A stretch of DNA of 64,000 nucleotides from Macrostomum lignano (lineage: Eukaryota): the NCBI GenBank assembly GCA_002269645.1, contig NIVC01003985.1, positions 2,372-66,371 on the forward strand. Reading direction: 5' to 3'. Below are positions 618 to 55,950 of this stretch, piece after piece (the stretch's first letter is position 1; every line of letters starts with the position of its first letter). A program made the position numbers and the translations under genes. The notes beneath the pieces were generated by a model, which saw nothing but the letters and a program-made list of their open reading frames with translations, was not told the origin of the DNA and made no database searches.

Positions 618-3600
618 ACCGAGAGACAGTGGCGCACACCGAGAGACAGTGGCGCAAACCGAGAGACAGTGGCGCACACCTAGAGACAGTGGCGCACACC
701 GAGAGACAGTGGCGCACACCGAGAGACAGTGGCGCACACCGAGAGACAGTGCCGCACACCAAGAGACAGTGCCGCACACCGAGAGACAGTGCCGCACACC
801 GAGAGACAGTGGCGCACGTGGCGCACACCGAGAGACAGTGGCGCACACCGAGAGACAGTGGCGCACACCTAGAGACAGTGACGCACACCGAGAGACAGTG
901 GCGCACACCGAGAGACAGTGGCGCACACCGAGAGACAGTGGCGCACACCGAGAGACAGTGGCGCACACCGAGAGACAGTGCCGCACACCGAGAGACAGTG
1001 GCGCACACCAAGAGACAGTGGGCACACCAAGAGACAGTGGTGCACACCAAGAGACAGTGGTGCACACCAAGAGACAGTGACGCACACCGAGAGACAGTGC
1101 CGCACACCAAGAGACAGTGGCGCACACCGAGAGACAGTGGCGCACACCGAAAGACAGTGACGCACACCGAGAGACAGTGCCGCACACCGAGAGACAGTGC
1201 CGCACACCAAGAGACAGTGGTGCACACCAAGAGACAGTGGTGCACACCAAGAGACAGTGGCGCACACCGAGAGACAGTGATGCACACCGAGAGACAGTGC
1301 CGCACACCAAGAGACAGTGGTGCACACCAAGAGACAGTGGCGCACACCGAGAGACAGTGGCGCACACCGAGAGACATTGGCACACACCAAGAGACAGTGG
1401 CGCACACCGAGAGACAGTGGCGCACACCGAGAGACAGTGCCGCACACCGAGAGACAGTGCCGCACACCTAGAGACAGTGCCGCACACCAAGAGACAGTGG
1501 TGCACACCAAAAGACAGTGGTGCACACCAAGAGACAGTGGCGCACACCGAGAGACAGTGGTGCACACCAAGAGACAGTGGCGCACACCGAGAGACAGTGG
1601 TGCACACCAAGAGACAGTGGCGCACACCGAGAGACAGTGGCGCACACCTAGAGACAGTGACGAACACCGAGAGACAGTGGCGCACACCGAGAGACATTGG
1701 AACACACCAAGAGACAGTGGTGCACACCAAGAGACAGTGATCCACACCGAGAGACAGTGGCGCACACCTAGAGACAGTGGCGCACACCGAGAGACATTGG
1801 CACACACCAAGAGACAGTGGTGCACACCAAGAGACAGTGATCCACACCGAGAGACAGTGGCGCACACCTAGAGACAGTGGCGCATACCGAGAGACAGTGG
1901 TGCACACCTAGAGACAGTGGCGCACACCAAGAGACAGTGCCGCACACCTAGAGACAGTGCCGCACACCAAGAGACAGTGGTGCACACCAAGAGACAGTGA
2001 CGAACACCGAGAGACAGTGGTGCACACCAAGAGACAGTGCCGCACACCGAGAGACAGTGGTGCACACCAAGAGACAGTGGTGCACACCAAGAGACAGTGA
2101 CGCACACCGAGAGACAGTGCCGCACACCAAGAGACAGTGGCGCACACCGAGAGACAGTGGCGCACACCGAGAGACAGTGGCGCACACCGAGAGACAGTGC
2201 CGCACACCGAGATACAGTGATGCACACCGAGAGACAGTGCGCACACCAAGAGACAGTGGTGCACACCAAGAGACAGTGGCGCACACCGAGAGACAGTGGC
2301 GCACACCAAGAGACAGTGGCGCACACCGAGAGACAGTGGCGCACACCGAGAGACAGTGCCGCACACCGAGAGACAGTGGCGCACACCGAGAGACAGTGCC
2401 GCACACCGAGAGACAGTGGCGCACACCAAGAGACAGTGGCGCACACCGAGAGACAGTGGCGCACACCGAGAGACAGTGCCGCACACCGAGAGACAGTGGC
2501 GCACACCGAGAGACAGTGCCGCACACCGAGAGACAGTGGCGCACACCAAGAGACAGTGGCGCACACCGAGAGACAGTGGCGCACACCGAGAGACAGTGCC
2601 GCACACCGAGAGACAGTGGGCACACCAAGAGACAGTGGTGCACACCAAGAGACAGTGGTGCACACCAAGAGACAGTGACGCACACCGAGAGACAGTGCCG
2701 CACACCAAGAGACAGTGGCGCACACCGAGAGACAGTGGCGCACACCGAAAGACAGTGACGCACACCGAGAGACAGTGCCGCACACCGAGAGACAGTGCCG
2801 CACACCAAGAGACAGTGGTGCACACCAAGAGACAGTGGTGCACACCAAGAGACAGTGGCGCACACCGAGAGACAGTGATGCACACCGAGAGACAGTGCCG
2901 CACACCAAGAGACAGTGGTGCACACCAAGAGACAGTGGCGCACACCGAGAGACAGTGGCGCACACCGAGAGACATTGGCACACACCAAGAGACAGTGGCG
3001 CACACCGAGAGACAGTGGCGCACACCGAGAGACAGTGCCGCACACCGAGAGACAGTGCCGCACACCTAGAGACAGTGCCGCACACCAAGAGACAGTGGTG
3101 CACACCAAAAGACAGTGGTGCACACCAAGAGACAGTGGCGCACACGAGAGACAGTGGTGCACACCAAGAGACAGTGGCGCACACCGAGAGACAGTGGTGC
3201 ACACCAAGAGACAGTGGCGCACACCGAGAGACAGTGGCGCACACCTAGAGACAGTGACGAACACCGAGAGACAGTGGCGCACACCGAGAGACATTGGAAC
3301 ACACCAAGAGACAGTGGTGCACACCAAGAGACAGTGATCCACACCGAGAGACAGTGGCGCACACCTAGAGACAGTGGCGCACACCGAGAGACATTGGCAC
3401 ACACCAAGAGACAGTGGTGCACACCAAGAGACAGTGATCCACACCGAGAGACAGTGGCGCACACCTAGAGACAGTGGCGCATACCGAGAGACAGTGGTGC
3501 ACACCTAGAGACAGTGGCGCACACCAAGAGACAGTGCCGCACACCTAGAGACAGTGCCGCACACCAAGAGACAGTGGTGCACACCAAGAGACAGTGACGA

Positions 3601-4243
3601 ACACCGAGAGACAGTGGTGCACACCAAGAGACAGTGCCGCACACCGAGAGACAGTGGTGCACACCAAGAGACAGTGGTGCACACCAAGAGACAGTGACGC
3701 ACACCGAGAGACAGTGCCGCACACCAAGAGACAGTGGCGCACACCGAGAGACAGTGGCGCACACCGAGAGACAGTGGCGCACACCGAGAGACAGTGCCGC
3801 ACACCGAGATACAGTGATGCACACCGAGAGACAGTGCCGCACACCAAGAGACAGTGGTGCACACCAAGAGACAGTGGCGCACACCGAGAGACAGTGGCGC
3901 ACACCAAGAGACAGTGGCGCACACCGAGAGACAGTGGCGCACACCGAGAGACAGTGCCGCACACCGAGAGACAGTGGCGCACACCGAGAGACAGTGCCGC
4001 ACACCGAGAGACAGTGGCGCACACCAGAGACAGTGGCGCACACCGAGAGACAGTGGCGCACACCGAGAGACAGTGGCGCACACCGAGAGACAGTGGCGCA
4101 CACCGAGAGACAGTGCCGCACACCGAGAGACAGTGGCGCACACCAAGAGACAGTGGCGCACACCGAGAGACAGTGGCGCACACCGAGAGACAGTGGCGCA
4201 CACAAGAGACAGTGCCGCACACCGAGAGACAGTGCCGCACACC
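618..4243. repeat. 20-bp minisatellite (ACCGAGAGACAGTGGCGCAC), about 180 units, with an about 1.6-kb higher-order duplication
   Basis: Continuous 20-nt period. Rare variants recur at offsets of 1597-1598 nt (GAAAG at 1149/2747; GATACAG at 2211/3808; the 19-nt GTGGGCAC unit at 1018/2616). Confidence 0.97.
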
Positions 4244-4767: not shown

Positions 4768-5239
4768 CAGGGTTCGGCAAACTCCGGCTCGAGGACCGCA
4801 TGCAGCCTGCGAAGCATCCGGCCCTCGGGTCCTTTGAAACTTGACAAGCAATTCGGTCCCGCTCAAGGTTTGTGTCGCTTTGCAGCTCTCCTCTCTCTAA
4901 TAATCTCTTCTCTCTAATAATCTCTTCTCTCTAATAATCTCTTCTCTCTAATAATCTCTTCTCTCTAATAATCTCTTCTCTCTAATAATCTCTTCTCTCT
5001 AATAATCTCTTCTCTCTAATAATCTCTTCTCTCTAATAATCTCTTCTCTCTAATAATCTCTTCTCTCTAATAATCTCTTCTCTCTAATAATCTCTTCTCT
5101 CTAATAATCTCTTCTCTCTAATAATCTCTTCTTTCTAATACTCTGACCCTCTTCCCTATTCCCTCCTCTATCCGGCAGTCATGCACTATGACTAAATTCT
5201 CTATCTAGCCCTTGAGGCAAAAAAGTTTTCCAACCCCTG
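4768..5239. mobile_element. Non-autonomous hAT-type element (MITE) carrying an internal minisatellite
   Basis: 16-nt imperfect TIRs: CAGGGTTCGGCAAACT, and AGTTTTCCAACCCCTG (reverse complement CAGGGGTTGGAAAACT). Perfect 8-bp TSD CTTTAGAA at 4760-4767 and 5240-5247. An 8-bp TSD with CAG termini is typical of hAT elements. Confidence 0.88.
4893..5140. repeat. 17-bp tandem repeat (CTCTCTAATAATCTCTT), about 14.5 units
   Basis: Near-perfect 17-nt period; lies inside the hAT MITE. Confidence 0.95.
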
Positions 5240-5925: not shown

Positions 5926-7257
5926 ATGAATACGCCCTGGCAACTACGGCCTGCCGCGCTCCTTCTGCTGACGTTTGCGTTTGGCGGAATCCAACAGGCT
6001 CATTCGAGAGGCTTTGAAGCTGAACTGCTCAAGTATCTGAAAAACAACATCACCGATTTCAGCCGAACACTTCGACCAAACATCAATCCCGAGAAGGTAG
6101 TTGAAGTGTCAATAATGGCGTTTCCTTTCCAAATTGTGTCAGTGAACAGCGTCAAACAAAGCATGACAATAAACATCATTCTGCAACTCAGCTGGTTCAA
6201 TGAGCATCTGGTTTGGGATCCTGCGAAATTCGGACGTCTGTCTGTCATAGAATGGGAAAACCAGCAGATTTGGACTCCTCCGATTGTGATTTTTAATGGA
6301 ATCGGTCAAAACCAGTTCCCCGTGCTTCGGTTCCCTTTGCACTTATCATCAACTACTAGAAACCTTTCAATAGTGGCCACCTCCTGGAGAGATGAAGTGG
6401 AATTCTCTTGCAAGCTCGACATGCGCCGTTTTCCTTTTGACCGACACAGCTGCGATATGGAGCTGTACATGGAGGACCAAGCCCACATGTACAATTCAAT
6501 AGTTCCTACAGTTAAAAATCTGTGGAATGAATCAAAAGAATTCAATGAAAAAAGTGCCTACCAAGAGAGCAGTGAGTGGAGAATGTTGAACTTGAGCACA
6601 AGTGTACACACGCGACAGTTTCAAACATTCAAAAACTCGCCGCCGACTCTTTTACCGATCTACACGGTTCACATGGAGATCGAGCGGGTGTCCACTTACT
6701 ATGTGTTGAATGTATTGACTCCCCTGCTGCTGCTTACGCTGCTCCAGGTGCTCGTCTTCTTCGTGCCCGTCGAGTCCGGAGAGAAGCTGGGCTTCGGCAT
6801 CACCATCATGCTGAGCTACACGGTGTTCCTGCTGCTGCTGGACGGCCTGCTGCCCAAGTCGCAGTCGATGCCGGCCGTGGCGTCGTTCATCACGGCGGCC
6901 ATGGTGCTGTCGACGTCGTCTCTGCTGCTGACGTCGGTGTCGATTCGGTTCCACTTCGCTGCGGAGTCTCAGCCGATGCCGTCGTGTCTCCGGGTCGTGT
7001 TCGTGAGCTGCCTGGGCCGCGTGATGCTGTGCGGTGAGCGGCGAGGCGGCAGCAGGACGGCGCCTGAGGAAGACGCCGACGACGCCGCGGTGAGCAAAGC
7101 GGGCCATGAAGACGAGAGGCCCGTAGAGACCTCCGGAGACCCGAGGCGCTCGGAGTGGCAGGTCGCAGCGGTCGCTGTGGAACGGCTGATGATTTTCTTG
7201 GGCTGTCCGACTGCAGGGGCCATTTTGGTTGCATTCGTCATTGTTCCTCTGCTGTGA
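5926..7257 (+). CDS. Intronless Cys-loop ligand-gated ion channel subunit (nAChR-like, non-alpha, cation-type), copy 1, 443 aa
   Basis: Signal peptide; Cys-loop CKLDMRRFPFDRHSC; TM1 YYVLNVLTP; TM2 preceded by GEK; TM3; amphipathic EWQ..A..VERL before TM4. No vicinal Cys pair in loop C. ATG at 5926, TGA at 7255-7257. Confidence 0.95.
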   Translation: MNTPWQLRPAALLLLTFAFGGIQQAHSRGFEAELLKYLKNNITDFSRTLRPNINPEKVVEVSIMAFPFQIVSVNSVKQSMTINIILQLSWFNEHLVWDPAKFGRLSVIEWENQQIWTPPIVIFNGIGQNQFPVLRFPLHLSSTTRNLSIVATSWRDEVEFSCKLDMRRFPFDRHSCDMELYMEDQAHMYNSIVPTVKNLWNESKEFNEKSAYQESSEWRMLNLSTSVHTRQFQTFKNSPPTLLPIYTVHMEIERVSTYYVLNVLTPLLLLTLLQVLVFFVPVESGEKLGFGITIMLSYTVFLLLLDGLLPKSQSMPAVASFITAAMVLSTSSLLLTSVSIRFHFAAESQPMPSCLRVVFVSCLGRVMLCGERRGGSRTAPEEDADDAAVSKAGHEDERPVETSGDPRRSEWQVAAVAVERLMIFLGCPTAGAILVAFVIVPLL

Positions 7258-8412: not shown

Positions 8413-9717
8413 TTATTCGACGAAGGGCGGAACCAGAAACGCAAACAAAATGGCGACAATCGCCACGCAGCCCACGACGGCCATCAGCCGCTCCACGGCG
8501 GTTGAAGCTGTTTTCCAGTCCGAGCGCCTCTCGCCGTCGTCACCCGCCTTTCTCACCACAGCGTCGTCGGCGTCTTCCTCAGGCGCCGTCCTGCCGCCGC
8601 CTCGCCTCTCACCGCACAGCATCACGCGGCCCAGGCAGCTCACGAACACGAACCGAAGACACAACGGCATCGGCTGAGACTCCGCAGCGAAGTGGAACCG
8701 AATCGCCACCGACGTCAGCAGCAGAGACGACGTCGACAGCACCATGGCCGCCGTGATGAACGACGCCACGGCCGGCATCGACTGCGACTTGGGCAGCAGG
8801 CCGTCCAGCAGCAGCAGAAACACCGTGTAGCTCAGCATGATGGTGATGCCGAAGCCCAGCTTCTCTCCGGACTCGACGGGCACGAAGAAGACAAGCACCT
8901 GGAGCAGCGTGAGCAGCAGTAGTGGAGTCACCACATTCAACACATAGTAAGTGGACACCCGCTCGATCTCCAGTCGTACCACGTAGGTCGGCAGTTTCAT
9001 CTTCGGTTGTCCCTTGAAAACCGCATATTCTTTGTAGCGCACGAACGTGCTCAAGTTCAGCAGATTCCATTCGCTGTTCCTAACATAGGCCCCCACTTCA
9101 TTGAATTCCACTGATGGCCCATACTGAAGGCTGCCCTTTTTTACAGCAGGTTGTCCTTTTCCCCGCCCCTGGTCGTTAGCGAACAGCTCCAAGTCGCAGG
9201 TGTGCCGATCGAACGGGAACCGACGCATGTCGAATTCGCAGGAGAACTCCCACTCACGCCTCCAGATGGCTGATACCACTGACTTGTCTGGTGCCACGGA
9301 TGTGATGAACGGCGGAAACTGTGGACTTAGCAGCTGGTTGTCTCCGATGCCATTGTACACAAATATCACAGGAAAGTAGATTTTGCCGATCTCCCAATCC
9401 ATCACGGTGATGTTGCCAAACTCCTTAGGATCCCAGACCAGTCTTTCCTCATACCAAGTTGCAAACATCAGGGCAGTAATTTTAATACTCTGCTGTGCGC
9501 TGTCCACCATCACAATCTGACCCATCACGGTGGACAAGTAGACGCTCATTGACTGACTGTCCAAGGCTGGTCGCAGAGTCGGACTGTAGTCCGTGATGTT
9601 GTTTTCCAGATACTTCAGCAAAGCCGCTTCGAAATCTTGCTTAGGCATCTTGGGGTAGCAGCTGGTCAGCTGGGTTGCGATGGCAACAAAAAATAATAAT
9701 TTGCTGAGTCCTAACAT
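8413..9717 (-). CDS. Intronless Cys-loop ligand-gated ion channel subunit, copy 2 (alternative upstream ATG at 9759)
   Basis: Signal peptide MLGLSKLLFFVAIATQLTSC; Cys-loop CEFDMRRFPFDRHTC; same TM1-TM3 module; TM4. The ORF track start at 9768 is GTG, so the ATGs at 9759 or 9717 are more likely. Confidence 0.93.
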   Translation of the reverse strand: MLGLSKLLFFVAIATQLTSCYPKMPKQDFEAALLKYLENNITDYSPTLRPALDSQSMSVYLSTVMGQIVMVDSAQQSIKITALMFATWYEERLVWDPKEFGNITVMDWEIGKIYFPVIFVYNGIGDNQLLSPQFPPFITSVAPDKSVVSAIWRREWEFSCEFDMRRFPFDRHTCDLELFANDQGRGKGQPAVKKGSLQYGPSVEFNEVGAYVRNSEWNLLNLSTFVRYKEYAVFKGQPKMKLPTYVVRLEIERVSTYYVLNVVTPLLLLTLLQVLVFFVPVESGEKLGFGITIMLSYTVFLLLLDGLLPKSQSMPAVASFITAAMVLSTSSLLLTSVAIRFHFAAESQPMPLCLRFVFVSCLGRVMLCGERRGGGRTAPEEDADDAVVRKAGDDGERRSDWKTASTAVERLMAVVGCVAIVAILFAFLVPPFVE

Positions 9718-10357
9718 TTCGGCAAAACTATTAGTCAAAGGCTCGCGTGACGAGTGCATTAATTCCACGAGAGTGAATGTCTTTTATGCTGCATCTCGAC
9801 AGTCTCAACTGTTTCTACACAGCCAATGGAAGTGCAGTTTAACAAAAGCTTTTCCCACCGAACAGGTTTGGCAAACATAAGGTTCAGTTGGGTTGAGAGG
9901 GTTGGCTGCATATCGAGTTTCTGGATTGCAAAAGCTACAATTTGGAGCGTTCTACCAGTGCGTTTTACCTTAGGCAAATTTTACAAATGTAACTACAACT
10001 CAATGCCACTCAAACAATCACACATCGTTGCTGGGAGCTTCCAGTAAGCTTGAAGACAAGAAATTTTACACTCCAAGAGCCCATTGCTGAGCCTAGCTGC
10101 ACATGCCTCTACCACAATGAATCTCTCGAGATCTCTCTCCCATCCCGCGCCGGTAGCTTCAGTCCCAATTATTTCTGTTTTGCTAATTCAACAGCTGGAA
10201 AATCCGTTGTCATGGACGCTAGCGCAAGCTATTTATGGAAGGCAAGTGATATTTATTATTCATGCAGCTGAGTCCACTTCTCAACAGTGAATTGGAGGGA
10301 GGACAATTTTGCATTTCTTCTGAGGCAGTAAAACACAGGTTCTCGCCGTGCGAGTCA

Positions 10358-11828: not shown

Positions 11829-13154
11829 TCAGTCAACGAAAGGCCGAACCAGGAACACGCAGAAGATGGCGACGGTGGCCACGCAACCCACGACGGCCAT
11901 CAGCCGCTCCACAGCGACCGCTGCGACCTGCCACTCCGAGCGCCTCGGGTCTCCGGAGGTCTCTACGGGCCTCTCGCCGTCATCCCCGCTCGCCTTGCTC
12001 ACGTTGTCAGCGTCTCCCTCTGGCGCCGTCCTGCTGCCGCCTCGCCTCTCACCGCACAGCATCACGCGGCCCAGGCAGCTCACGAACACGACCCGGAGAC
12101 ACAACGGCATCGGCTGAGACTCCGCAGCAAAGTGGAACCGAATCGCCACCGACGTCAGCAGCAGAGACGACGTCGACAGCACCATGGCCGCCGTGATGAA
12201 CGACGCCACGGCCGGCATCGACTGCGACTTGGGCAGCAGGCCGTCCAGCAGCAGCAGGAACACCGTGTAGCTCAGCATGATGGTGATGCCGAAGCCCAGC
12301 TTCTCTCCAGACTCGACGGGCACGAAGAAGACGAGCACCTGGAGCAGCGTGAGCAGCAGTAGTGGAGTCACCACGTTGAGCATGTAGTAAGTGGACACTC
12401 GCTCAATCTCCAGTCGCATCACAAAGGTCGGCAGCGGCATTTTCGGTAGTTCTTTGAAAACTTTATAAAAGCGGAAGTGCACGAAGGTGCTCACATTTAG
12501 TATTCGCCATTCACTGTTTTCTCTATAGGCAGACAACTCATTGTATTCCAGACCCGATGCGAGCATGTTGCCCTTGTGCGGCATCACCAGCTCGTTGCCG
12601 CGGCCCATGTCGTACATGTAGAGCTCCAAGTCACAGGTGTGCTGATCGAACGGGAACTGCCTCATGTCGAACTCGCAGGAAAACTCCCAGTTCCGTTTCC
12701 AACTAGCGCTTACTACGGTGGAATTTGGCGACACTGAAGTCAGGAATGTGGGAATCTGGGGCTTCATCAGCTGATTGTCGCCGATACCATTGTACACAAA
12801 AATGATGGGGAACCAGATCTGGCTGGTGCCCCAGTCCACGACCGACACTCCCCCGAACTCGGACGGGTCCCACACCAGGCGCTGCTCCTCCCAGGTGGCC
12901 AGGAGCAATGCAGAAATCTTGAAGCTCTGGCTAGCGCTGTCAACGGACACGATTTGATTTACCATGACGGCCACAGAGATGTTCACAACCTCTGTGTGGT
13001 TAAGTCTTGGTCTGACCATCGGATGATAGTCGGTGATGTTGTTCTTCAAGTACTTCATGAGCTCGATTTGTGGATCAGAAGCGTTGCACAGTGGCAGAGC
13101 TGCAACGAGAGCCACTGCTGGCAAAAGCAGCAGGTCCACTCTTGGATGAAGCAT
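11829..13154 (-). CDS. Intronless Cys-loop ligand-gated ion channel subunit, copy 3, 441 aa
   Basis: ATG at 13154 (the track start is TTG); signal peptide; Cys-loop CEFDMRQFPFDQHTC; GEK-TM2; TM4. Confidence 0.95.
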   Translation of the reverse strand: MLHPRVDLLLLPAVALVAALPLCNASDPQIELMKYLKNNITDYHPMVRPRLNHTEVVNISVAVMVNQIVSVDSASQSFKISALLLATWEEQRLVWDPSEFGGVSVVDWGTSQIWFPIIFVYNGIGDNQLMKPQIPTFLTSVSPNSTVVSASWKRNWEFSCEFDMRQFPFDQHTCDLELYMYDMGRGNELVMPHKGNMLASGLEYNELSAYRENSEWRILNVSTFVHFRFYKVFKELPKMPLPTFVMRLEIERVSTYYMLNVVTPLLLLTLLQVLVFFVPVESGEKLGFGITIMLSYTVFLLLLDGLLPKSQSMPAVASFITAAMVLSTSSLLLTSVAIRFHFAAESQPMPLCLRVVFVSCLGRVMLCGERRGGSRTAPEGDADNVSKASGDDGERPVETSGDPRRSEWQVAAVAVERLMAVVGCVATVAIFCVFLVRPFVD

Positions 13155-13664
13155 TGCCAAACTCAAAATAAGAAAGTGTTTGCCGAAACTCAGCCCCTCT
13201 CTGGATAAATATCAGCTTTTGCAGGATCTTTTTCCTTAGTTCAACACAATTTATTTTAACATCGGTCGATTTTTATCGATCGGCCTTAAATTTAACGAAC
13301 CAACAGAAAAAATTTCTCAAATTGATTTCTCAACCACCACTATGTAGTTGCCAGAATTCTTCCCGCTAATTGGCTAGGCACCTAGATACCAATTAAAAAG
13401 AGCATGGGATGTGGCACAAGCAATGATTGACACTTGTAGTAAAATCCACTCTCGACAAAAATTTAGCATTCAGCCAAAAGAGCGAAGCGTGGAAATTGAT
13501 TCTCAAGATCTGTTTAGCAACTATGTTAACAATTACGTTTTGTATTTGGCAAGGATTCTGTTTACCTCAGAGGATAATATTCAGCATTACTTTTAGTAGA
13601 AGAGACGATATTTTAATCTCAAAAATGCTTTACGCGAGCAATCTACGTTTTATAATCGTCTCAT

Positions 13665-16327: not shown

Positions 16328-16460
16328 TCCTAATTTGTCAATTAAGGACCATAGACATTATAGGCATACGTCATTAGATGATGGGTCATAGGTCATAGGG
16401 CATATATGTCATAGATGACCTATGCCTATACGTCTATGATCCTAAATTGACAAATTAGGA
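16328..16460. mobile_element. Small foldback/MITE (about 45-bp imperfect inverted repeat)
   Basis: TCCTAATTTGTCAATTAAGGACCATAGAC..TATAGGCATA is mirrored by TATGCCTATACGTCTATGATCCTAAATTGACAAATTAGGA. Confidence 0.55.
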
Positions 16461-16975
16461 AAGCACATGTGGCTCACATGTGGCTCAGTAGAACAGCAGA
16501 AACCGACCTAGATTTTGTTGACTCAGTCCAGTGGCTCGCATTGCCTCCTGCACTGTTCGGACGAACCTTTCTGCGAGCCCGTTGCTTTTCGGATGGTACG
16601 GCGGTGTTGTTACATGCTGGCAACCAACACTCTTGAGCCAATTGGTTGTGTCGCGACTTTCCTAGTCATTTCTTTAGTTCACTTTTACTTGTCCGTGTTT
16701 ACTCCCTTTTCTCTCTCTCTGTCTAGCTCAATCTTGTTATTCTCATCTCTCTCTCCCTCGCCGCCTTCTGATTGGCTCTCCATTCTAGCCTCCCTCTTTA
16801 GTCGCGCACACCACCCCTCCTTTTATTAAATTGGAGTCAACCCCCTCTAAGATAGTCGGATAAATATACTGGTTTGGGCCCTGCGCCCACTTACTTCCTC
16901 TCTGCTCTTCTGTCTCTGCAATTTAATTATAGTTTATACTCTTATTTTCTCGATAGGTTGTAACCAACTGCGTCT

Positions 16976-19900
16976 ATTGTCAGTCACCAGAGTCCTAGGA
17001 ATTCCGAGCTGCGAAAAAGTTCGTCGTAGCCGAGACACCCTGTGGCTGATTCCCTGTCGTTAGTCAGATGGACTTCTGGGTAGCTTGAGAAAGACTCTAC
17101 CAACACCAATAAGTACAGCCAATTGATTGGTCCCGCAGTCGGGACGATTCCATGACTCTGTAGTCTGTGGCCAGGAACTGAGGTGATTCCGGTTGCTCGA
17201 TTTGACCATCTTGTACATTGTACACCTGCTGATGTAGTCCATGACTTTGTAGCGTATTCACTAATATTATAAAAGTATTGCAGCTAGCGTATTATAATTA
17301 CTGTATTCTAGAAACTTCCGCGTAAACACGCACTTTCCATATTTGGCGTTTTGAATTCCCGCGCACCCCCTTTCTAGAAACTGCTTCTCGAACTTTCCGG
17401 ATTCCGGAATGTTCCATCAACACGAATATAAATATACAGCACCCTAGCACGCAATTACTCAAGCCCATTCTCTCTATTCTTTTCCACACGGAAACAATCA
17501 AAGAAAAATTAAAGCAAACGAACCACCGCTTTCCACGCCTCAATTATTTTCGCTATTCTACAACTGGTCCGGTGAGGCGTCCAAAATTCATCTGAGTCCC
17601 CAGCAAGGGGCTAGGCCGTCGAAGTGCGTGTAAATATCCGTGTAAATACTGCCTGAATGTAGCATAACGCCATCATCGACATTGCCATCAACGCCATGCC
17701 TCATCGTCGTCTGCACGCGCCCGTCGTCCACGCCACTACTGGATATAGCTACCGGATGCATCATACGTGTACGACACGATATTAACCTGATCGACGTAAT
17801 TCTACAAACGTGGTATCGAAGTTGACACGGAACTCATCGACGACAGACAGACAAATGCCTACACGGGTATTACCAGGCCGTTCGATAGAGTCTTCCGTGA
17901 ACCCCACCAAATTCTACGCCAAAATAAGCCGAAATATCACCAGTCAACCAAGCTGCTATTGACCAAGGAACGCGCGGCTGAAACCTTCGGCGATCGTCTT
18001 TATATGACACCTTCCACGAGGTGATCGACATCCCGAGGGGCAACCCAGCCTGTCAATCGGTTCGCCTTGTGCGCTCCATCAGCCATGCCCAGCAATATTC
18101 AGCGACCGCCCGCCGTCGTCCTCATATTAGTCTCGGGAGTCTGTCTGCAATTCGAAAGGTCGTCCTGCCTGACGATCCGTCGTCCTGGAGTGTGGCTGAG
18201 CGTGCCACAAGCATCCCAAGTTCTCCTACCAGAAGCGCGTTGCGTGTACACCTGCTACGAGATGCCTACCGGAGCAGAGCGACAGCCCGCCTCGACTCAC
18301 GGTGCACCGATCTTGTTCCGGGTGTCGTCTGTCTGCATCCTGGCACATTCCGTCTATGTACATTGCTATTCGGCCAACCGGGGGCATCGCAGTAAGGTCT
18401 GATTTGCGAAATGACTAATTAATCAAGCAGCTTGACTTCACCAGTAATAACGTTTCACTTATTATTGAATATGTACATCATCGCCCCTATGCTGTAACAG
18501 TTTGAAATCTGCATGTACAAACGTACATGTCCACGCCCCCCCCCAATTCATCATCTAATGTATATATTTTTTTCCGGTACTTCTCCAGGTGACTCCGTCT
18601 CCGGCGGGGGAACTGTTGTAGCGTATTCACTAATATTATAAAAGTATTGCAGCTAGCGTATTATAATTACTGTATTCTAGAAACTTCCGCGTAAACACGC
18701 ACTTTCCATATTTGGCGTTTTGAATTCCCGCGCACCCCCTTTCTAGAAACTGCTTCTCGAACTTTCCGGATTCCGGAATGTTCCATCAACACGAATATAA
18801 ATATACAGCACCCTAGCACGCAATTACTCAAGCCCATTCTCTCTATTCTTTTCCACACGGAAACAATCAAAGAAAAATTAAAGCAAACGAACCACCGCGT
18901 TCCACGCCTCAATTATTTTCGCTATTCTACAACTTCCTTGTCCAAAGCTGGCCACCAGTATTGTGAGCGTATTAAAGACTTAGTCCTTTCCATGCTCAGG
19001 TGCGTCGAATGAGCTTTCTCCATGATCGTTTGTCTCAACGCACGCGGTGGAACTACTCTCAATCCTCTAATAACCATTCCGTGTCCCATAGTTAGTTCGC
19101 TGGACACCATCTTGTAAGGCCGTAGGTCCTGGTGGTTGAAATTTCCAGTTCGGATCGTTTCTTGGAGTCGTTGTAACTCCGGACATTGCTCGGACTGAAT
19201 CCGCAACTGCTCAATAGTTGAAGTCGGGTGAGCCAGCTCAACACTGCCAATGCTGAGTGTTTGCCCCTGTCAAAAAATGCAAGAAGTCGAGACAATGCAT
19301 CGGATTTCATCAGGCCAGACCTCTGATACCTCTGCGGATCAGGCCGTCCTCCAGTACGAAGCCTAGAAATCGCATCTTTCGCTGAGAGATTTGGCACTTC
19401 CTGTCGTTAATTTTGAGATTGTGCTGCTGAAGCCTCGCTCTGACCAGCGCTTCCCTTTGTTTCAACTGCTCCTTAGTCTGGTCGCCAATTAGTATGTCAT
19501 CAATAATAGGCTACGGCTCTTTCAATTCCCTGCACGAGCTGTGTGTTCTCTTTGAAATATGTTGGGCGCTTTAGTGATACCAAAAATCAGCCGATTATAT
19601 TGAAAATTTCCAAATGGAGTCGACATAACAGTCAATGGTTTCGAGTCGTCCTCCAACTCGATCTGATTATAAGCTGGCTCTAGATCCAGGATAGTATACC
19701 AGTGACACCCTGAAACTGCACTGAAGGCTTCTTCGGCCGTTGGCATAGGATGGCTGTCCCTTACCATCTGGGGGTTTAATGTCTTTTTATAATCGACACA
19801 GAGTCTGATGTGTCCATCCGGCTTTGGCCGGAAAATATGAAATGGTAGTTCGTGAAGCTTGTCTTGAAACTGGACTGTTCCTTTGAACTGACCAAGCGTC

Positions 19901-21080
19901 TGGAACTCGTATGTGTCCACGTAACCTGTCAGTTTCAGTTCACTGGTCTGTAGCCGTGGCCTGCCGATTAGTCCAGACTGCATCCGACATCACGGACCCC
20001 CCGTGTCCAGTTGACACTGAATCGGGATTTTCTTGTCTTCGTGCACAAACTGTAGGGTGACGCAGATGGCATCCTGAGTCGGGCCTGTAATTGCTCCAAT
20101 TGTGAACTGGTCTCCATTCATCGCTAGGGACTTGCTGGACACAAACTGCACTGAGTCGACACGGCCTGCAGCGTCTATCTTCGTCTGGCACGCCTTTTGA
20201 AAGTGGTTCAGCTTGCCGCACTTGCGACAAGCCTTCCCAGTTGCCGGTCACTGCATTTTTCCATGCGGTGGCCCACATCGAGGACAGGTGGTGCTAGTGC
20301 TACGTTTGAACTTGCCTCGACTTTGTCCTTTCGACGATTGTCCTTTGGACTTGAGCACGCCGATCTTCATGACGGCCGTACTCTCTCCTTTCGGTGCGCT
20401 CTTCATGATCTCCGTGGCTATTAAGGTGGAATGAGCCTTAGTCTCGGCAACCGCATCCTTGAAGGCCAAGATATGATGGTCCTTGACCAAAAGCTTGCCT
20501 ATGATCTGTTGATCCATCCGAACGAAGATGAGTTAGTCCCGCAGGCGCTCATCCTTGTTATCAAATTTGCATTTCTCCGCCCCCCGCAGAAGCCGTTCAG
20601 CGAACGCCCGCACTGACTCTCCAGGTGTGCGCGTGCACTGTTGGAACGGGTACCGTTTAGCCAATACAAAGGTTGCCGGTACCAACAGTTCCTTTTAGGC
20701 AGCCTCCAACACCACAGCTGACAATTGACTCGGCTTTGCTAGAGCCACCCGATCGGCTACTCGGTCATATAGGGCCGGAGACAGTTTTATGAGCAGCATC
20801 TGCGCCTTAGTCTCAGCATCCCAGCGGTAAAATTTGCCGCAACTTCAAAGCGGTCCAACCATCGGGCGAAATTATTTCCGACGTCCAGCCGCTCGATCTC
20901 CATGGAGCCTCCTTCGGTGCGCCTTGCTGCACCAGCAGCTTCATAGACTGGAGTCTTGACAACAGAGACTGCTGCCTTGGTCGACTCGGTTGGTGGACCT
21001 GCTCCTGTTTTTTGTAGGAGAGCCGAGTGTTTTCTCGCCTTGCTTACTCATGCCTGTAGCTGATCATGCTTGCGACGCCA
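16976..21080 (-). mobile_element. Decayed Ty3/Gypsy retrotransposon (gag, RT, integrase), interrupted by a nested element
   Basis: Gag knuckles CPRCGPPHGKMQ*PATGKACRKCGKLNHFQKAC. RT: IRLCVDYKKTLN..HPMP..LDLEPAYNQI..TPFGNFQYNRLIFG..AP..FQR and IIDDILI. Integrase: HSTH..YWWPALDKEVMDYISRC and FSQLGIPRTLVTDN. PBS-like TGGCGTCGC at 21080-21072. Contains stops, frameshifts and deletions. Confidence 0.9.
17248..18931 (+). mobile_element. Complete non-autonomous LTR retroelement (TRIM/LARD-like): 315-bp LTRs and a 1,054-bp internal region
   Basis: LTRs 17248-17562 and 18617-18931 (TGTAG..CTACA), one mismatch seen. TGG PBS-like site just after the 5' LTR; PPT GGCGGGGGAA before the 3' LTR; 4-bp TSD ACTT at 17244-17247 and 18932-18935. 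Confidence 0.93.
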
Positions 21081-22174: not shown

Positions 22175-25150
22175 TATTTAACAAAAGCTTTTACCAGTGA
22201 ACAGGTTCAAGTAAACAAGAAGGTTCAGTGCAGAGAGGGTTGGCTGCATCGATTTTCTGGATTGCAAAGAATACAATTTGGAATGCTTGAAGCTACGCGT
22301 CAGTTGACTAAGTTAAGTTAAGCTAAGTTAGACAATGGGAGCAGTGCACGCGTTTTACTAAGGCTATAATTTTAACTAGAATTTAATTCTTCTTAAACAG
22401 TACACACATCTTTTCTGGGAAACTGTCATCACGTTAGCTTGAAAAACAAAAAATACTCTTTAAGAGCCCATTGTTGAGCCAACTTTTACATGCCTCTACC
22501 ATACTACATCGCTATCTCCCTCTTTTCATCCCATCACGCACCGGGAGCTTAAGCCCAATTAATTACTTCTTGTTTGCCACATTTCAATAGCAGGAAAATC
22601 CGTTGTCATAGACGCTAGCACTAGCTCTTCATTGGACAGCAAGTGATATCTATAATTCATAGGGCCGAGCCCACTTCTCAACAGTGAATTGGAGGGAGAA
22701 TGATTTCGCATTTCTTCTGAGGCAGCGCGATGCAGATGAGAACTAAAAATTGCAACCCGTTTTTGCAAATTTACGGCAAACACACAAGCCATAAACACTT
22801 GCGCAGTCATATGAGTGATGTCGTGCGACTTACATCATGACAGCCGACACCCAAGTCACAGAGAGTGTACATGCCTGCCGATTAGAGAAAGTCAAATTGG
22901 CGCTGTACACCTTGTGGCGAGCGTGTGTGTGACTGCGTGCCTGCGTACAGTTTGGTGCTCTTCTTAGTTAGCACTGGTTGTGACATGATGTCACTGAAGG
23001 CCTTCGGTCCTGGATGCCCATAATCCACTTGCAACTACGAGCTATTTATAGGTCATTTAAGCAGTTTTAAAAAAGCGTTTCACATGCCGCAAATTCCAAA
23101 GATAAAGACCAGTCTCACTGCGATTGAAAACTTTTATTGAGAAGTCACCTCTTACCAATCGAAGGACAGAAAGGACGTAGTACATTTAGAGTCTAACTTA
23201 AAGGCTAAGACCTTTGCTCTAACTAAAGAAAAAGTAAAACAATTTTTTTTTGTATTCCACGGCTTGTACAAGCATTTTTTCACTTTTAAGTATGAATTTA
23301 TAATTAATTTGATGACAGAATAAACAAGCCGCAACGGCACAAGATTTCCTACCAAAAAAGGTTACAAAAGGCAAAACAGCGTATTAAAACGTAGGAACAG
23401 AATAGAGAACGTTGCGAATTTTTGTTTCAATGTTTACGAGCTCGTACTACTACGATCAATGAGTCAGCAGCTGCAACTATTCAAAATTCATTGCACGAAG
23501 GGCCGAACGAGGAACACGCAGAAGATGGCGACGGTGGCCACGCAGCCTATGATGGCCATCAGCCGCTCCACAGCGACCGCTGCAACCTGCCAGTCCGAGC
23601 GCCTTGGCTGTCCAGAGGTCTCTCCAAGGCTCTCATCTTCGTCGCCCACCTTGCTCACAACAGAGTCGTCGGCGTCTCTCTCCGGCGCCGTCCTGCCGCC
23701 GCCTCGCCTCTCACCGCACAGCATTGCGCGGCCCAGGCAGCTCACGAACACGAACCGAAGACACGACGGCATCGGCTGAGACTCCGCAGCGAAGTGGAAC
23801 CGAATCGACACCGACGTCAGCAGCAGAGACGACGTCGACAGCACCATGGCCGCCGTGATGAACGACGCCACGGCCGGCATCGACTGCGACTTGGGCAGCA
23901 GGCCGTCCAGCAGCAGCAGGAACACCGTGTAGCTCAGCATGATGGTGATGCCGAAGCCCAGCTTCTCTCCAGACTCAACGGGCACGAAGAAGACGAGCAC
24001 CTGGAGCAGCGTGAGCAGCAGCAGGGGAGTCACCACGTTGAGCATGTAGTAGGTGGACTCGCGCTCGATCTCCAGTCGTACCACGTAGTTCGGCAGCGGA
24101 ATTTTCGGTAGTCGTTTGAAAATTTTATAATAGCGGAAGTGCACAAAGGTGCTCACATTTAGTATTCGCCATTCGCTATTTTCGACATAAGTAAAAAGCT
24201 CATTGTATTGCAGACCCTGTGCGAGCATGTCGCCTGTATGCGGCATGACCAGCTTATTGCCGCGGCCCATGTCGTACATGTAGAGCTCCATATCGCAGGT
24301 GTGCCGATCGAACGGGAACTGCCTCATGTCGAACTCGCAGGAGAACTCAAAGTTTCGTTTCCAGTTAGTGCTTACTATGGTTGAATTCGGTGACACGGAA
24401 GTCAGGAATACGGGAAGCTGGGGCTTCATCAGCTGATCATCGCCGATGCCGTTGTACAGGAATATGATGGGGAACCAGATCAGACTGCTGTCCCAGTCCA
24501 CGACCGACACTCCTCCGAACTTGGAGGGGTCCCACACCAGGCGCTGCTCCTCCCAGGTGGCATATAACAATCCGGAAATCTTGAAGCTCTGGCTAGCGCT
24601 TTCAACGGACACAATTTGATTAACTATGGCGGCTACAGAGACGTTCACAACTTCTGTGTGGTTGAGTCTCGGCCAGACCATCGGGTGATAGTCGGTGATG
24701 TTGTTCTTCAAGTACTTCATGAGCTCGATTTGTGGATCAGATGCGTTGCACAGTGGCAGAGCTGCAACGAGAGCCACTGCTGGCAGAAGCAGCAGGTCCA
24801 CTCTTGGATGAAGCATTGCCAAACTCAAAATAAGAAAGTGTTTGCCGAAACTCAGCCTTTCTCTGGATGAACGTCAGTCGATACGCTTTTTCAGTTTGCC
24901 TCCAATTTAACGAGCCAACAGGAAAAAAAGAATTTTTCAACTACCCACTTTGCAGTTGCCAGACTTCTTTCCGCTAATTGGCTAGGCTCCTACTAGATAC
25001 CAAATCAAAAAGGGATGTGGCACAAAAAATGATTGACACTTTGACACAAAATTTCACTTTTGACCAAAATTTTAGCAATTCGTCAAACTTCTCAAGATCT
25101 GCTTAGCAACTCTGGGAACAATTATATTTTCGAATTCGGCAAGAATTCTG
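22175..25150. repeat. Segmental duplicate of about 9835-13560 (channel gene plus flanks)
   Basis: Collinear matches: 9839 TTAACAAAAGCTTTT = 22179; about 9870-10330 = about 22220-22730; about 10960-11000 = about 22860-22910; 3' flank 11680-11829 = 23330-23488; 5' flank 13167-13560 = 24829-25150. Confidence 0.85.
23488..24816 (-). CDS. Intronless Cys-loop ligand-gated ion channel subunit, copy 4, 442 aa (closest to copy 3)
   Basis: ATG at 24816; signal peptide identical to copy 3; Cys-loop CEFDMRQFPFDRHTC; GEK-TM2; TM4. Confidence 0.95.
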   Translation of the reverse strand: MLHPRVDLLLLPAVALVAALPLCNASDPQIELMKYLKNNITDYHPMVWPRLNHTEVVNVSVAAIVNQIVSVESASQSFKISGLLYATWEEQRLVWDPSKFGGVSVVDWDSSLIWFPIIFLYNGIGDDQLMKPQLPVFLTSVSPNSTIVSTNWKRNFEFSCEFDMRQFPFDRHTCDMELYMYDMGRGNKLVMPHTGDMLAQGLQYNELFTYVENSEWRILNVSTFVHFRYYKIFKRLPKIPLPNYVVRLEIERESTYYMLNVVTPLLLLTLLQVLVFFVPVESGEKLGFGITIMLSYTVFLLLLDGLLPKSQSMPAVASFITAAMVLSTSSLLLTSVSIRFHFAAESQPMPSCLRFVFVSCLGRAMLCGERRGGGRTAPERDADDSVVSKVGDEDESLGETSGQPRRSDWQVAAVAVERLMAIIGCVATVAIFCVFLVRPFVQ

Positions 25151-50139: not shown

Positions 50140-50506
50140 TGTTGATTGTTGGATCAACTGGATTTCTGAGCAAAGATCTGTTTACTTTTGAGGCTGGCTA
50201 GTGCTAAGAACAATGGTTTAATAAGGGTGTACAAACACTCGCAAGCGCTGCACTCGGTAGTTCACACTAAACAAATTGGCACACCGAGTACGCCATATAC
50301 TATCGCAGCTGTCTCTCTTCCTTTCTTTCCATTCTGCTTATCAAGTATTATACTGTACAAGATCTCTTGTTAGCCTCTCTTGCTGCCTCAATGTACAATC
50401 TATTCAACTTTGTGCTAAGAATTGAGAACGAGGCGAGCTGTGAAGGAGAGATCTGTCTGTCACTTATCTGTCAGTCAAGTGAGTTGAACTGAACTGCACA
50501 AAATTT

Positions 50507-50810
50507 TGTCTCTTTGGTGTGTGCCCTGTCTTTTTCGTTGGCGCCTTTAGTCATGGTTGGCGCCCCTGTCTCTTTGGTGGGCGCCCTTGTCTCTTGTTTG
50601 GCGCCCCCGTCACTTGGTTGGCGCCCCTGTATTTTGGTTGGCGCCCCTGTCTCTTTGGTGGGCGCCCCTTGTCTCTTGGTGGGCGCCCCTGTCTCTTGGT
50701 TGGTTGGCGCCCCTGTCTCTTGGTGGGCGCCCCTGTCTCTTTGGTTGGCGCCCCTGTCTCTTGGTTGGCGCCCCTGTCTCTTGGTTGGCGCCCCTGCCTC
50801 TTTGTTGGGT
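50507..50810. repeat. 20-bp GGCGCCCCTGTCTCTTGGT[T/G] minisatellite, about 370 nt upstream of the ACSF2-like gene
   Basis: Same family as 35105-35680 and 54690-55090; shares the tail CTTTGTTGGGTTACCTA[C/G]ATGT with the latter. Confidence 0.88.
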
Positions 50811-55924: not shown

Positions 55925-55950
55925 TCTCTGTCTGTCTATTTGTTTGTCCA

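What the first reader, a model, noticed from the sequence alone, without database searches (positions are those of the whole stretch)
6676..7190. Pore module is homogenised at synonymous sites and shows patchwork sharing, indicating gene conversion or exon-free domain shuffling
Seen: copy 1 (6754-6981) differs from the copy 2 reverse complement at only 2 of about 230 nt, although their ECDs are very divergent. Variant sites group the genes incompatibly. SVSIRF/QPMPS pairs copies 1+4 against SVAIRF/QPMPL in 2+3. CLRV/GGSRT pairs 1+3 against CLRF/GGGRT in 2+4. GAGATCGAGCGGGTGTCCACTTACTATGTGTTGAATGT is shared by 1+2, and the ERPVETSGDPRRSEWQVAAVAV coding tract is identical in 1+3. Yet ECDs and flanks pair 3+4. 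GC content rises abruptly at the ECD/TM1 junction. Inference: recurrent, possibly GC-biased, gene conversion confined to the TM module. Protein selection cannot explain the synonymous identity.
Basis: partly seen in the sequence, partly recalled or inferred. Interest (0 to 1): 0.8.

Follow-up and report, generated by a model that had tools for sequence, protein, structure and literature searches.

The report
Gene conversion homogenises channel-pore module
Four neighbouring acetylcholine-receptor-like channel genes of the flatworm Macrostomum lignano have very different ligand-binding halves but share an almost identical, GC-enriched ~0.5 kb pore-coding segment, a clean but ordinary case of domain-limited gene conversion between paralogs.

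Summary
The window is Macrostomum lignano contig NIVC01003985.1. It holds four intact, intronless nAChR-like pLGIC genes: c1 5926-7257(+), c2 8413-9768(-), c3 11829-13166(-), c4 23488-24828(-). Their extracellular domains are 45-70% identical in nucleotides, with dS about 2 or saturated (c3-c4: 88%, dS 0.35). A ~515-nt segment (c1 6676-7190: pre-M1, M1-M3 and most of the intracellular loop) is 92-95% identical. Its core is 97-100% identical in all six pairs, with dS 0.05-0.08. Max-chi-square breakpoints fall at 6676/7191. All three possible 2+2 groupings occur among 18 informative sites (7/6/5), which no tree without recombination reproduces. A second M. lignano cluster of the same family serves as control: similar protein conservation, but TM dS 0.9-1.2 and GC3 0.56-0.79, against GC3 0.9 here. 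So neither protein nor codon constraint explains the identity. The GC3 excess is confined to the tract (31 vs 6 sites; 11 vs 11 in the ECD). Best reading: recurrent, probably GC-biased, interlocus gene conversion limited to the pore module, as in TLR1/TLR6. Caveat: the assembly was Pilon-polished, so the fine SNP patchwork needs long-read confirmation. This is a new member of a known kind, of moderate interest.

The parts
5926..7257 (+). c1: intact intronless nAChR-like pLGIC gene (443 aa, ATG start)
   Evidence: ORF. Pfam Neur_chan_LBD 1.2e-27 and Neur_chan_memb 1.4e-18. Cys-loop C-x13-C and the ESGEK M2 motif are read directly from the translation.
6676..7190 (+). c1 copy of the homogenised module: pre-M1 (EIERVSTYY), M1, M2, M3 and the intracellular loop up to just before M4. 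The core 6714-7083 is 97-100% identical to all other copies.
   Evidence: Sliding identity, max-chi-square breakpoints 6676/7191, self-BLAST 6655-7191, dS 0.05-0.08.
8413..9768 (-). c2: intact intronless pLGIC gene. The ORF starts at a GTG; the first ATG is at 9759. It lies tail-to-tail with c1.
8483..8970 (-). c2 copy of the module (core 8563-8932). It carries a 27-nt deletion in the loop relative to c1, c3 and c4. With the c1 module it forms an inverted repeat about 1.3 kb apart.
   Evidence: Coordinate map, BLAST 95% over 445 nt, 2 mismatches in 228 nt against c1.
11829..13166 (-). c3: intact intronless pLGIC gene (first ATG at 13154)
11899..12410 (-). c3 copy of the module (core 12003-12372). 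Its loop segment is identical to c1 7117-7181.
23488..24828 (-). c4: intact intronless pLGIC gene (first ATG at 24816), a recent duplicate of c3 (ECD dS 0.35, dN/dS about 0.27)
23558..24072 (-). c4 copy of the module (core 23665-24034). It shares a 212-nt exact match with c1.
13055..13206 (-). Second, separate high-identity tract between c3 and c4 (partner about 24717-24868): about 52 nt of 5' leader plus the signal-peptide coding region at 96-98%. The rest of the ECD is 83-93% identical.
   Evidence: (run of 35 polymorphic sites, p 0.01).

Best explanation
The four genes are paralogous subunits of a cation-selective, nAChR-like pentameric ligand-gated channel in Macrostomum lignano. Three are in tandem and one is inverted.

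Proposed mechanism: DNA breaks in the pore-coding segment of one paralog are repaired using the same segment of a neighbouring paralog as template. This is non-allelic (interlocus) gene conversion, probably by synthesis-dependent strand annealing. It works equally between direct and inverted copies. Repeated events keep about 515 nt nearly identical in all four genes: pre-M1, M1-M3 and most of the intracellular loop. The extracellular ligand-binding domain and M4 with the C-terminus keep diverging.

Why the tract stops at the ECD/M1 junction:
- The flanks are too diverged to sustain heteroduplex. Exact matches of 111-212 nt exist only inside the tract.
- Conversions that overwrite ligand-binding specificity are probably removed by selection.
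- The highly conserved M2 codons, 86-90% identical in nucleotides even between unconverted clusters, are the likely nucleation island.
- Each conversion restores the homology needed for the next one.

Mismatch repair biased toward G/C in the heteroduplex has pushed GC3 of the tract to about 0.9.

Shown: the identity profile, the dS contrast, the breakpoints, the incompatible site patterns, the tract-specific GC3 excess, and the absence of all of these in a sister cluster. Inferred: the repair mechanism, the GC bias of repair, the homology-threshold and selection limits on the tract, and any benefit of a shared pore or assembly domain.
For: - Domain architecture: Pfam LBD and memb domains in all four genes; the best solved-structure matches are nAChR alpha1 and alpha7 at about 1e-44.
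- Identity profile: ECD 45-70% against TM core 97-100% for all pairs.
- NG86 dS: ECD 1.7 to saturated (0.34 for c3-c4) against TM 0.06-0.08.
- Four-fold-site identity of about 93-95% in the TM core; Fisher p down to 1e-14.
- Breakpoints at 6676/7191.
- c1 resembles the other copies only within 6655-7191.
- Even the normally fast-evolving intracellular loop is 92% identical among the c copies, against 45% among m1-m3.
- All three 2+2 partitions occur (7/6/5), spatially clustered, p 0.01-0.04. This is incompatible with a no-recombination null: at most 8 minority-partition sites in 3000 simulations against 11 observed.
- Sister cluster L001 in the same genome: TM dS 0.93-1.24 and GC3 0.56-0.79.
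- Tract-specific GC3 excess: 31 vs 6 sites (p 4e-5) against 11 vs 11 in the ECD.
- Other intronless genes in the window have GC3 0.44-0.65, and at most 0.80 in any 100-codon window.
- Precedent: TLR1/TLR6 (PMC2077338).
Against: - No raw reads and no second assembly of this cluster could be examined. Mlig_3_7 was Pilon-polished with short reads and RNA-seq, which could redistribute SNPs among near-identical copies and inflate the patchwork.
- The classical test could not be done. That test asks whether paralogs are more alike than orthologs inside the tract only. No second species was available, and in the ECD tree the window cluster and the L001 cluster are reciprocally monophyletic (99.8%).
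- GC bias is inferred from composition, not from polarised substitutions.
- Four-fold sites favour G over C (0.67 against 0.24). Strand-symmetric gBGC alone does not predict this.
- The sister cluster is also tandem and closely spaced, yet it is not homogenised. Why is unexplained.
Confidence: 0.8

Rival explanations
1. Assembly or polishing artefact. The TM segments were collapsed, or were over-written by Pilon using mis-mapped Illumina or RNA-seq reads from an expressed paralog or from the two other about 97-98% identical copies of the locus.
For: - Mlig_3_7 is Canu on PacBio plus Pilon with Bowtie2-mapped Illumina and STAR-mapped RNA-seq reads (PMC5730564).
- The assembly holds three near-identical copies of the neighbouring part of this locus, which gives up to 12 similar modules for reads to mis-map among.
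- The patchwork rests on only 18 informative sites.
Against: - Short reads cannot map onto, and so cannot overwrite, a segment 30-50% different. Polishing can only shuffle SNPs between copies that are already very similar.
- The module is about 0.5 kb inside unique flanks that long reads span.
- Each copy keeps private variants and c2 has a private 27-nt deletion.
- The assembler kept multi-kb copies only 2-3% apart as separate contigs.
- The GC3 shift is coherent across about 100 codons.
Confidence: 0.05
2. One or a few recent chimeric events, not ongoing conversion. An unequal crossover, a template switch or a retro-copy chimera pasted one TM cassette onto older, diverged ECDs.
For: - All copies are about equally similar in the core (dS 0.05-0.08), as expected from a single recent spread.
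- The genes are intronless, so an RNA intermediate is conceivable.
- The 5' boundary at 6676 is sharp and shared for c1 against the other three copies.
Against: - The tract is internal. c1 diverges again at 7192, so a single crossover cannot produce it.
- The pairs have different right-hand boundaries: 7089, 7158 and 7191.
- Three incompatible partitions occur in spatial blocks.
- GC3 of about 0.9 against 0.56-0.79 in the sister cluster implies a sustained biased process.
Confidence: 0.1
3. No exchange at all. Extreme purifying selection on the pore, including its synonymous sites (codon usage, mRNA structure, or an overlapping or antisense element), has frozen the sequence.
For: - M2 is invariant in amino acids even between clusters, and 86-90% identical in nucleotides.
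- Strong NNG/NNC codon preference in the tract.
Against: - The sister cluster encodes nearly the same M1-M3 protein with TM dS 0.93-1.24.
- The unconstrained intracellular loop is homogenised too (92% against 45%).
- The tract's own composition predicts only about 51% identity at four-fold sites, against 93-95% observed.
- No Rfam family matches the window.
- The antisense ORFs are those expected from a GC3-rich sense strand.
Confidence: 0.02

Closest known systems
TLR1/TLR6 domain-restricted gene conversion in mammals (Kruithof et al. 2007, PMC2077338)
   Same: Tandem paralogous receptor genes. The N-terminal ligand-recognition part diverges. The C-terminal part, with the transmembrane and intracellular signalling or assembly region, is kept identical in DNA by repeated gene conversion with reproducible boundaries.
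   Different: Here there are four genes, one of them inverted. The protein family differs (pLGIC). The tract is internal, with M4 and the C-terminus excluded. The GC3 shift is strong. The independent, per-species recurrence that proves the TLR case could not be tested.
Interlocus gene conversion producing 'mosaic divergence' in tandem paralogs (for example HMA4 in Arabidopsis halleri, bioRxiv 10.1101/2025.10.29.685298; ATP1A1 in Leptodactylus frogs, bioRxiv 10.1101/2020.08.04.234435; teleost opsins), listed
   Same: Conversion homogenises part of a gene, while selection or lack of homology preserves divergence elsewhere.
   Different: Those cases involve young duplicates that are similar along their whole length. 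Here the unconverted ECDs are saturated at synonymous sites, so the contrast is extreme.
GC-biased gene conversion raising GC3 in multigene families (mammalian histones, Hsp70, human segmental duplications). Cited from my own knowledge of Galtier 2003 and Kudla et al. 2004. PMC3790853 was only listed.
   Same: The converted tract is markedly GC3-richer than the unconverted parts and than unconverted relatives.
   Different: Here the signal is a sub-genic step of about 0.5 kb in a flatworm. A G-over-C excess at four-fold sites is not explained by gBGC alone.
Clustered protocadherin and UGT1A 'variable plus constant' loci
   Same: A family of receptors with diversified extracellular parts and one common membrane or intracellular part.
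   Different: In those loci the constant part is a single shared set of exons joined by splicing. Here every intronless gene carries its own copy, and sameness is maintained by recombination. This is a functional analogy only, and it was not tested.

Membership tests
Cys-loop / pentameric ligand-gated ion channel (nAChR-like, cationic) | N-terminal Neur_chan_LBD domain followed by a Neur_chan_memb domain | tested here: met
   All four proteins exceed the Pfam gathering scores for PF02931 (85-118 bits) and PF02932 (61-68 bits). The top solved-structure matches are nAChR alpha1 and alpha7 at E about 1e-44.
Cys-loop / pentameric ligand-gated ion channel (nAChR-like, cationic) | Signature disulfide loop C-x13-C in the ECD | tested here: met
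   Read directly from the translations: C-KLDMRRFPFDRHS-C in c1 and C-EFDMR(R/Q)FPFD(R/Q)HT-C in c2-c4.
Cys-loop / pentameric ligand-gated ion channel (nAChR-like, cationic) | Four membrane helices, and an M2 with the -1' Glu / 0' Lys (GEK) ring and 9' Leu typical of cation-selective members | tested here: met
   ESGEKLGFGITIMLSYTVFLLLLD is present in all copies, and a hydrophobic M4 follows the loop. The assignment of ring positions uses my own knowledge of alpha7 numbering. No electrophysiology was done.
nAChR alpha-type subunit | Vicinal Cys-Cys in loop C | tested here: not met
   There is no CC pair in the loop-C region (…SAY(Q/R/V)E(S/N)SEW…) of any copy. The subunits are therefore non-alpha-like, and the ligand is unknown.
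Interlocus (non-allelic) gene conversion / concerted evolution | Paralog identity inside the tract far above the flanks, including at synonymous sites, with definable breakpoints | tested here: met
   dS 0.05-0.08 against 1.7 to saturated. Four-fold-site Fisher p down to 1e-14. Breakpoints at 6676/7191.
Interlocus (non-allelic) gene conversion / concerted evolution | Phylogenetic incompatibility (four-gamete failure) or a mosaic of donor tracts | tested here: met
   Partitions 7/6/5, clustered (p 0.01-0.04). Simulation without recombination gave at most 8 against 11 observed. Caveat: Pilon polishing.
Interlocus (non-allelic) gene conversion / concerted evolution | Inside the tract, paralogs within a species are closer than orthologs between species; outside the tract they are not | not testable with these tools
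   No other Macrostomum genome was reachable. The only outgroup is a paralogous cluster of the same genome (L001), which shows that the family is not intrinsically frozen. Homeologous contigs could not be walked.
GC-biased gene conversion | Excess of W-to-S changes confined to the converted tract | tested here: inconclusive
   An unpolarised comparison fits: the window copies are GC3-richer than the L001 copies at 31 vs 6 invariant-amino-acid codons in the TM, and 11 vs 11 in the ECD. There is no outgroup close enough to polarise changes, and the G>C asymmetry is unexplained.

The most novel reading that the evidence does not exclude
The identical pore and loop module is not just a by-product of homology-dependent repair. 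On this reading it is a selected 'constant region': gene conversion does in intronless genes what shared constant exons do in protocadherin or UGT1A clusters. It would keep one common assembly, gating and trafficking domain, so that subunits with different ligand-binding domains can co-assemble freely. Pore-module-limited conversion would then be a recurrent feature of tandem pLGIC clusters across animals. A flounder 5-HT3A-like pair shows a 97.7% identical M1-M2 exon beside exons that are 76-84% identical.
Probability: 0.15. Interest if true: 0.6.

Novelty: new member of a known kind. Interest (0 to 1): 0.35.

Why it matters
- It is an unusually sharp natural example of sub-genic concerted evolution. 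Synonymous divergence steps roughly 20-fold or more (saturated for c1) within a few nucleotides of a domain boundary, and GC3 steps with it.
- It involves both direct and inverted paralogs, and an unconverted sister cluster in the same genome serves as an internal control.
- For annotation and phylogenetics of the large lophotrochozoan and flatworm pLGIC expansions, it warns that whole-gene trees and TM-based trees will mislead.
- For channel biology, it offers a natural set of chimeras: four different ligand-binding domains on one pore.
- It does not change what is known about how gene conversion works.

Tried and rejected
1. Independent copies of the cluster. The window contig has two colinear, about 97-98% identical sister contigs (NIVC01000305.1 and NIVC01001474.1). 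The 10-kb flanks stop about 14 kb short of c4. The intervening ACSL-like gene has no annotated protein to walk with (no hits).
2. c1-c4 themselves are not in the protein collections. The exact look-up of c1 failed. Homology searches found only M. lignano relatives at no more than 50% identity over the full length. P0001 and P0002 have no contig on record.
3. RNA-level explanations. There were no Rfam matches at gathering score and no tRNAs in the window.
4. Extra copies or pseudogene donors in the window. tblastn and blastn found only the four genes.
5. Codon-bias explanation. It is rejected by the sister-cluster control and by the expected-identity calculation.
6. CpG-depletion or methylation contrast. 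CpG o/e is 0.8-1.1 everywhere, so this is uninformative.
7. Literature. Full-text searches for gene conversion or concerted evolution together with nicotinic or ligand-gated channels returned nothing on pLGIC pore-module conversion.
Full report
**What is there.** The window carries four intact, intronless open reading frames of 443-451 codons: c1 5926-7257 (+), c2 8413-9768 (-), c3 11829-13166 (-) and c4 23488-24828 (-).
- All four have a Neur_chan_LBD domain followed by a Neur_chan_memb domain above Pfam's thresholds.
- Their best matches among solved structures are nicotinic receptor alpha1 and alpha7 subunits, at E about 1e-44.
- The translations show the C-x13-C Cys-loop, an ESGEK...L9' M2 typical of cation-selective members, and no vicinal cysteines in loop C.
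- They are therefore non-alpha, nAChR-like subunits with an unknown ligand.
- tblastn finds no further copies or fragments in the window.

**Where it comes from.** A neighbouring acyl-CoA-synthetase gene matches a database protein at 100%. That protein lies on Macrostomum lignano Mlig_3_7 contig NIVC01003985.1 (66,371 bp). Window coordinate equals record coordinate minus 2371.
- c1 is not on record. The homology searches returned none of c1-c4, so they appear unannotated.
- Their only full-length relatives above about 30% identity are other M. lignano proteins at no more than 50%.

**Check of the observation.**
- c1 6754-6981 against c2 has 2 mismatches in 228 nt, at 6828 and 6940.
- The 38-mer at 6676 occurs only in c1 and c2.
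- c1 7117-7181 is identical to c3.
- The amino-acid variants pair c1+c4 against c2+c3 at 6940 and 6983, and c1+c3 against c2+c4 at 6994 and 7051.

In a codon alignment, nucleotide identity differs sharply between domains:

| Region | Pairs | Nucleotide identity |
|---|---|---|
| ECD | c1 vs others | 45-60% |
| ECD | c2 vs c3/c4 | 60-70% |
| ECD | c3 vs c4 | about 88% |
| M1-M3 | all six pairs | 97-100% |

Identity falls again in the distal loop and M4.
Other pairs end at 7089 or 7158.
- BLAST of the window against itself finds c1 similar to the other genes only within 6655-7191.
- GC rises from 0.45-0.52 to 0.63-0.64, and GC3 from 0.5-0.75 to 0.92-0.99.

**Is it more than chance or constraint?**
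- Nei-Gojobori dS in the ECD is saturated for c1, about 1.7-2.2 for c2 and 0.34 for c3-c4. In the TM core it is 0.05-0.08 for every pair.
- At four-fold degenerate sites of codons with the same amino acid, 61-64 of 66-68 sites are identical in the TM core. In the ECD the figure is 7-23 of 32-47 for the five distant pairs (Fisher p 7e-8 to 1e-14).
- The tract's skewed composition (G 0.67, C 0.24) would by itself give only about 51% identity.

The decisive control is a second tandem cluster of the same family in the same genome. This is L001, contig NIVC01000059.1, with genes m1-m3.

| Measure | L001 cluster (m1-m3) | Window cluster (c1-c4) |
|---|---|---|
| ECD dN | 0.47-0.61 | comparable |
| M2 amino acids | same invariant sequence | same invariant sequence |
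| TM dS | 0.93-1.24 | 0.06-0.08 |
| TM nucleotide identity | 72-78% | 97-98% |
| TM GC3 | 0.56-0.79 | about 0.9 |
| Intracellular loop identity | 45% | 92% |

The first five rows come and the loop identity. The loop is normally the least constrained part of a pLGIC. Protein-level or codon-level constraint therefore cannot explain the pattern.

**Mosaic structure.** Within the 485 ungapped columns of the tract there are 64 variable and 18 parsimony-informative sites.
- They split 7/6/5 among the three possible groupings and lie in spatial blocks: 0011 at 6702-6711; 0110 at 6723-6726; 0110 at 6940-6983; 0101 at 6990-7051; and so on.
- Neighbouring sites are more compatible than shuffled ones (p 0.01-0.04).
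- Simulations on a tree without recombination used 120-485 mutable sites and a transition bias. They never gave more than 8 sites in the two minority groupings in 3000 runs each, against 11 observed.
- This indicates several exchanges with different end points, not one.
- Caveat: Mlig_3_7 was assembled with Canu from PacBio reads, then polished with Pilon using Bowtie2-mapped Illumina and STAR-mapped RNA-seq reads (PMC5730564). Inside a 97-99% identical 400-nt tract, short reads can mis-map. Two further copies of the locus exist in the assembly, about 97-98% identical. Part of the SNP patchwork could therefore be a polishing artefact.
- Polishing cannot create the homogenisation itself. Reads do not map onto a segment that differs by 30-50%. 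Each copy also keeps private variants, and c2 has a private 27-nt deletion.

**GC bias.**
- At codons with invariant amino acids, the window's copies have higher GC3 than the L001 copies at 31 sites and lower GC3 at 6 in the TM module (p 4e-5). In the ECD the counts are 11 and 11.
- Other intronless genes in the window have GC3 0.44-0.65 and never exceed 0.80 in any 100-codon window.
- The GC enrichment is thus specific to the converted tract, as GC-biased gene conversion predicts.
- The comparison is unpolarised. The G-over-C excess at four-fold sites is not predicted by gBGC alone.

**Mechanism proposed.** The best reading is recurrent non-allelic gene conversion among the four paralogs. It includes the inverted pair c1/c2, whose modules form a 0.5-kb inverted repeat about 1.3 kb apart.
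- The tract is probably limited by homology. Exact matches of 111-212 nt exist only inside it.
- The M2 codons are 86-90% identical even between unconverted clusters, which gives a natural nucleation island.
- Selection against overwriting the ligand-binding domain probably also limits the tract.
- Each conversion restores the homology needed for the next, and biased mismatch repair raises GC3.
- The identity profile, the dS contrast, the breakpoints and the composition are shown. The repair pathway, its bias and the role of selection are inferred.
- The residual divergence in the core (5-9 differences per 300 nt) is of the same order as the 2-3% divergence between the duplicated copies of the locus. 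This suggests, by inference only, that the last homogenisation is about as recent as that duplication.

**Rivals.**
1. An assembly or polishing artefact may affect the fine patchwork but not the main pattern (see above).
2. A single chimeric event or an unequal crossover does not fit. The tract is internal, the right-hand boundaries differ between pairs, and the site patterns are incompatible.
3. Frozen synonymous sites are refuted by the sister cluster.

**Comparison with what is known.** Domain-restricted gene conversion in tandem receptor paralogs is established. In mammalian TLR1/TLR6 the ligand-binding N-terminus diverges, while the C-terminal LRRs, the transmembrane helix and the TIR domain are repeatedly homogenised (PMC2077338). 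'Mosaic divergence' under interlocus conversion has been modelled and described for other tandem families (listing). GC enrichment of converted multigene families is also known (my own knowledge).
- Full-text searches found no description of this for pentameric ligand-gated channels.
- I therefore file it as a new member of a known kind.
- The classical membership test could not be run, because no other Macrostomum genome was reachable. That test asks whether paralogs are closer than orthologs only within the tract.
- In the ECD tree the two M. lignano clusters are reciprocally monophyletic (99.8%).

**A hint of generality.** Fourteen gene predictions that fuse two tandem pLGIC units were taken from the homology search. 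For ECD identities of 41-50%, most have TM amino-acid identity of 49-84%. One clear exception is a flounder 5-HT3A-like pair. Its M1-M2 exon is 97.7% identical in nucleotides over 222 nt, while its other exons are 76-84% identical (L005). This is a single case and was not analysed further.

**Verdict.** The phenomenon is real at the level of the assembly and mechanistically ordinary. It is a particularly clean example, with a built-in negative control. Interest is moderate (0.35).

Noticed in passing
L005 13037-13258 vs 18522-18743 (Paralichthys olivaceus CM045673.1:10427824-10457883): In a flounder tandem pair of 5-HT3A-like genes, the M1-M2 exon is 97.7% identical in nucleotides while the other exons of the pair are 76-84% identical. 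This looks like the same pore-limited homogenisation in a vertebrate, intron-containing pLGIC pair.
   Followed up: partly
window 13055-13206 and 24717-24868: c3 and c4 share a separate 96-98% identical tract covering about 52 nt of 5' leader plus the signal-peptide codons, with a sharp upstream edge. The rest of their ECD is 83-93% identical. This is possibly a second conversion tract or a shared promoter-proximal element.
   Followed up: partly
L002 (window contig), L003 (NIVC01000305.1), L004 (NIVC01001474.1): The cytochrome-b561 / acyl-CoA-synthetase / 377-aa-gene part of the locus is present three times in the Mlig_3_7 assembly at about 97-98% identity. This agrees with the extra large chromosomes of the DV1 line. 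The pLGIC cluster is presumably triplicated too, but it could not be reached.
   Followed up: partly
L001 7863-9188, 10001-11305, 12783-14105, fragment 16369-16671: This is a second tandem cluster of the same pLGIC family in M. lignano, with all genes on one strand, and it is not homogenised. Only the middle gene is annotated (PAA92206.1). m1, m3 and the window's c1-c4 appear to be unannotated, intact genes.
   Followed up: yes
window 6721-7020 and equivalents: At four-fold degenerate sites of the homogenised core, G is far commoner than C on the coding strand (0.65-0.68 against 0.22-0.26, with A+T below 0.1). This strand asymmetry is not explained by GC-biased conversion alone.
   Followed up: no
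window 618-4243; also 35107-35687, 50506-50810, 54694-55083: There is a 3.6-kb array of a 20-nt unit (ACCGAGAGACAGTGGCGCAC, 182 copies, 90% matches) at the contig end. Related 20/41-nt arrays lie elsewhere in the window, about 75-80% identical in inverted orientation. Several other minisatellites are present: 17-nt units at 4887 and 10357, 23-nt units at 29672 and 37261, a 54-nt coding repeat at 60783, and (TCTG)n at 55927.
   Followed up: no
window 29065-29661, 32251-33207, 34684-about 35000 (+): These are exons of a second AMP-binding (long-chain acyl-CoA-synthetase-like) gene (Pfam PF00501 4.5e-13). No protein for it is on record in the collections.
   Followed up: partly
window 17244-17565 vs 18612-18934; 19522-19983 (-): A 323-nt direct repeat at 99.4% identity, 1.4 kb apart, lies next to an ORF that, from its sequence read by eye (no domain search was run), looks like a reverse-transcriptase fragment. 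This is probably a retroelement remnant between c3 and c4.
   Followed up: no
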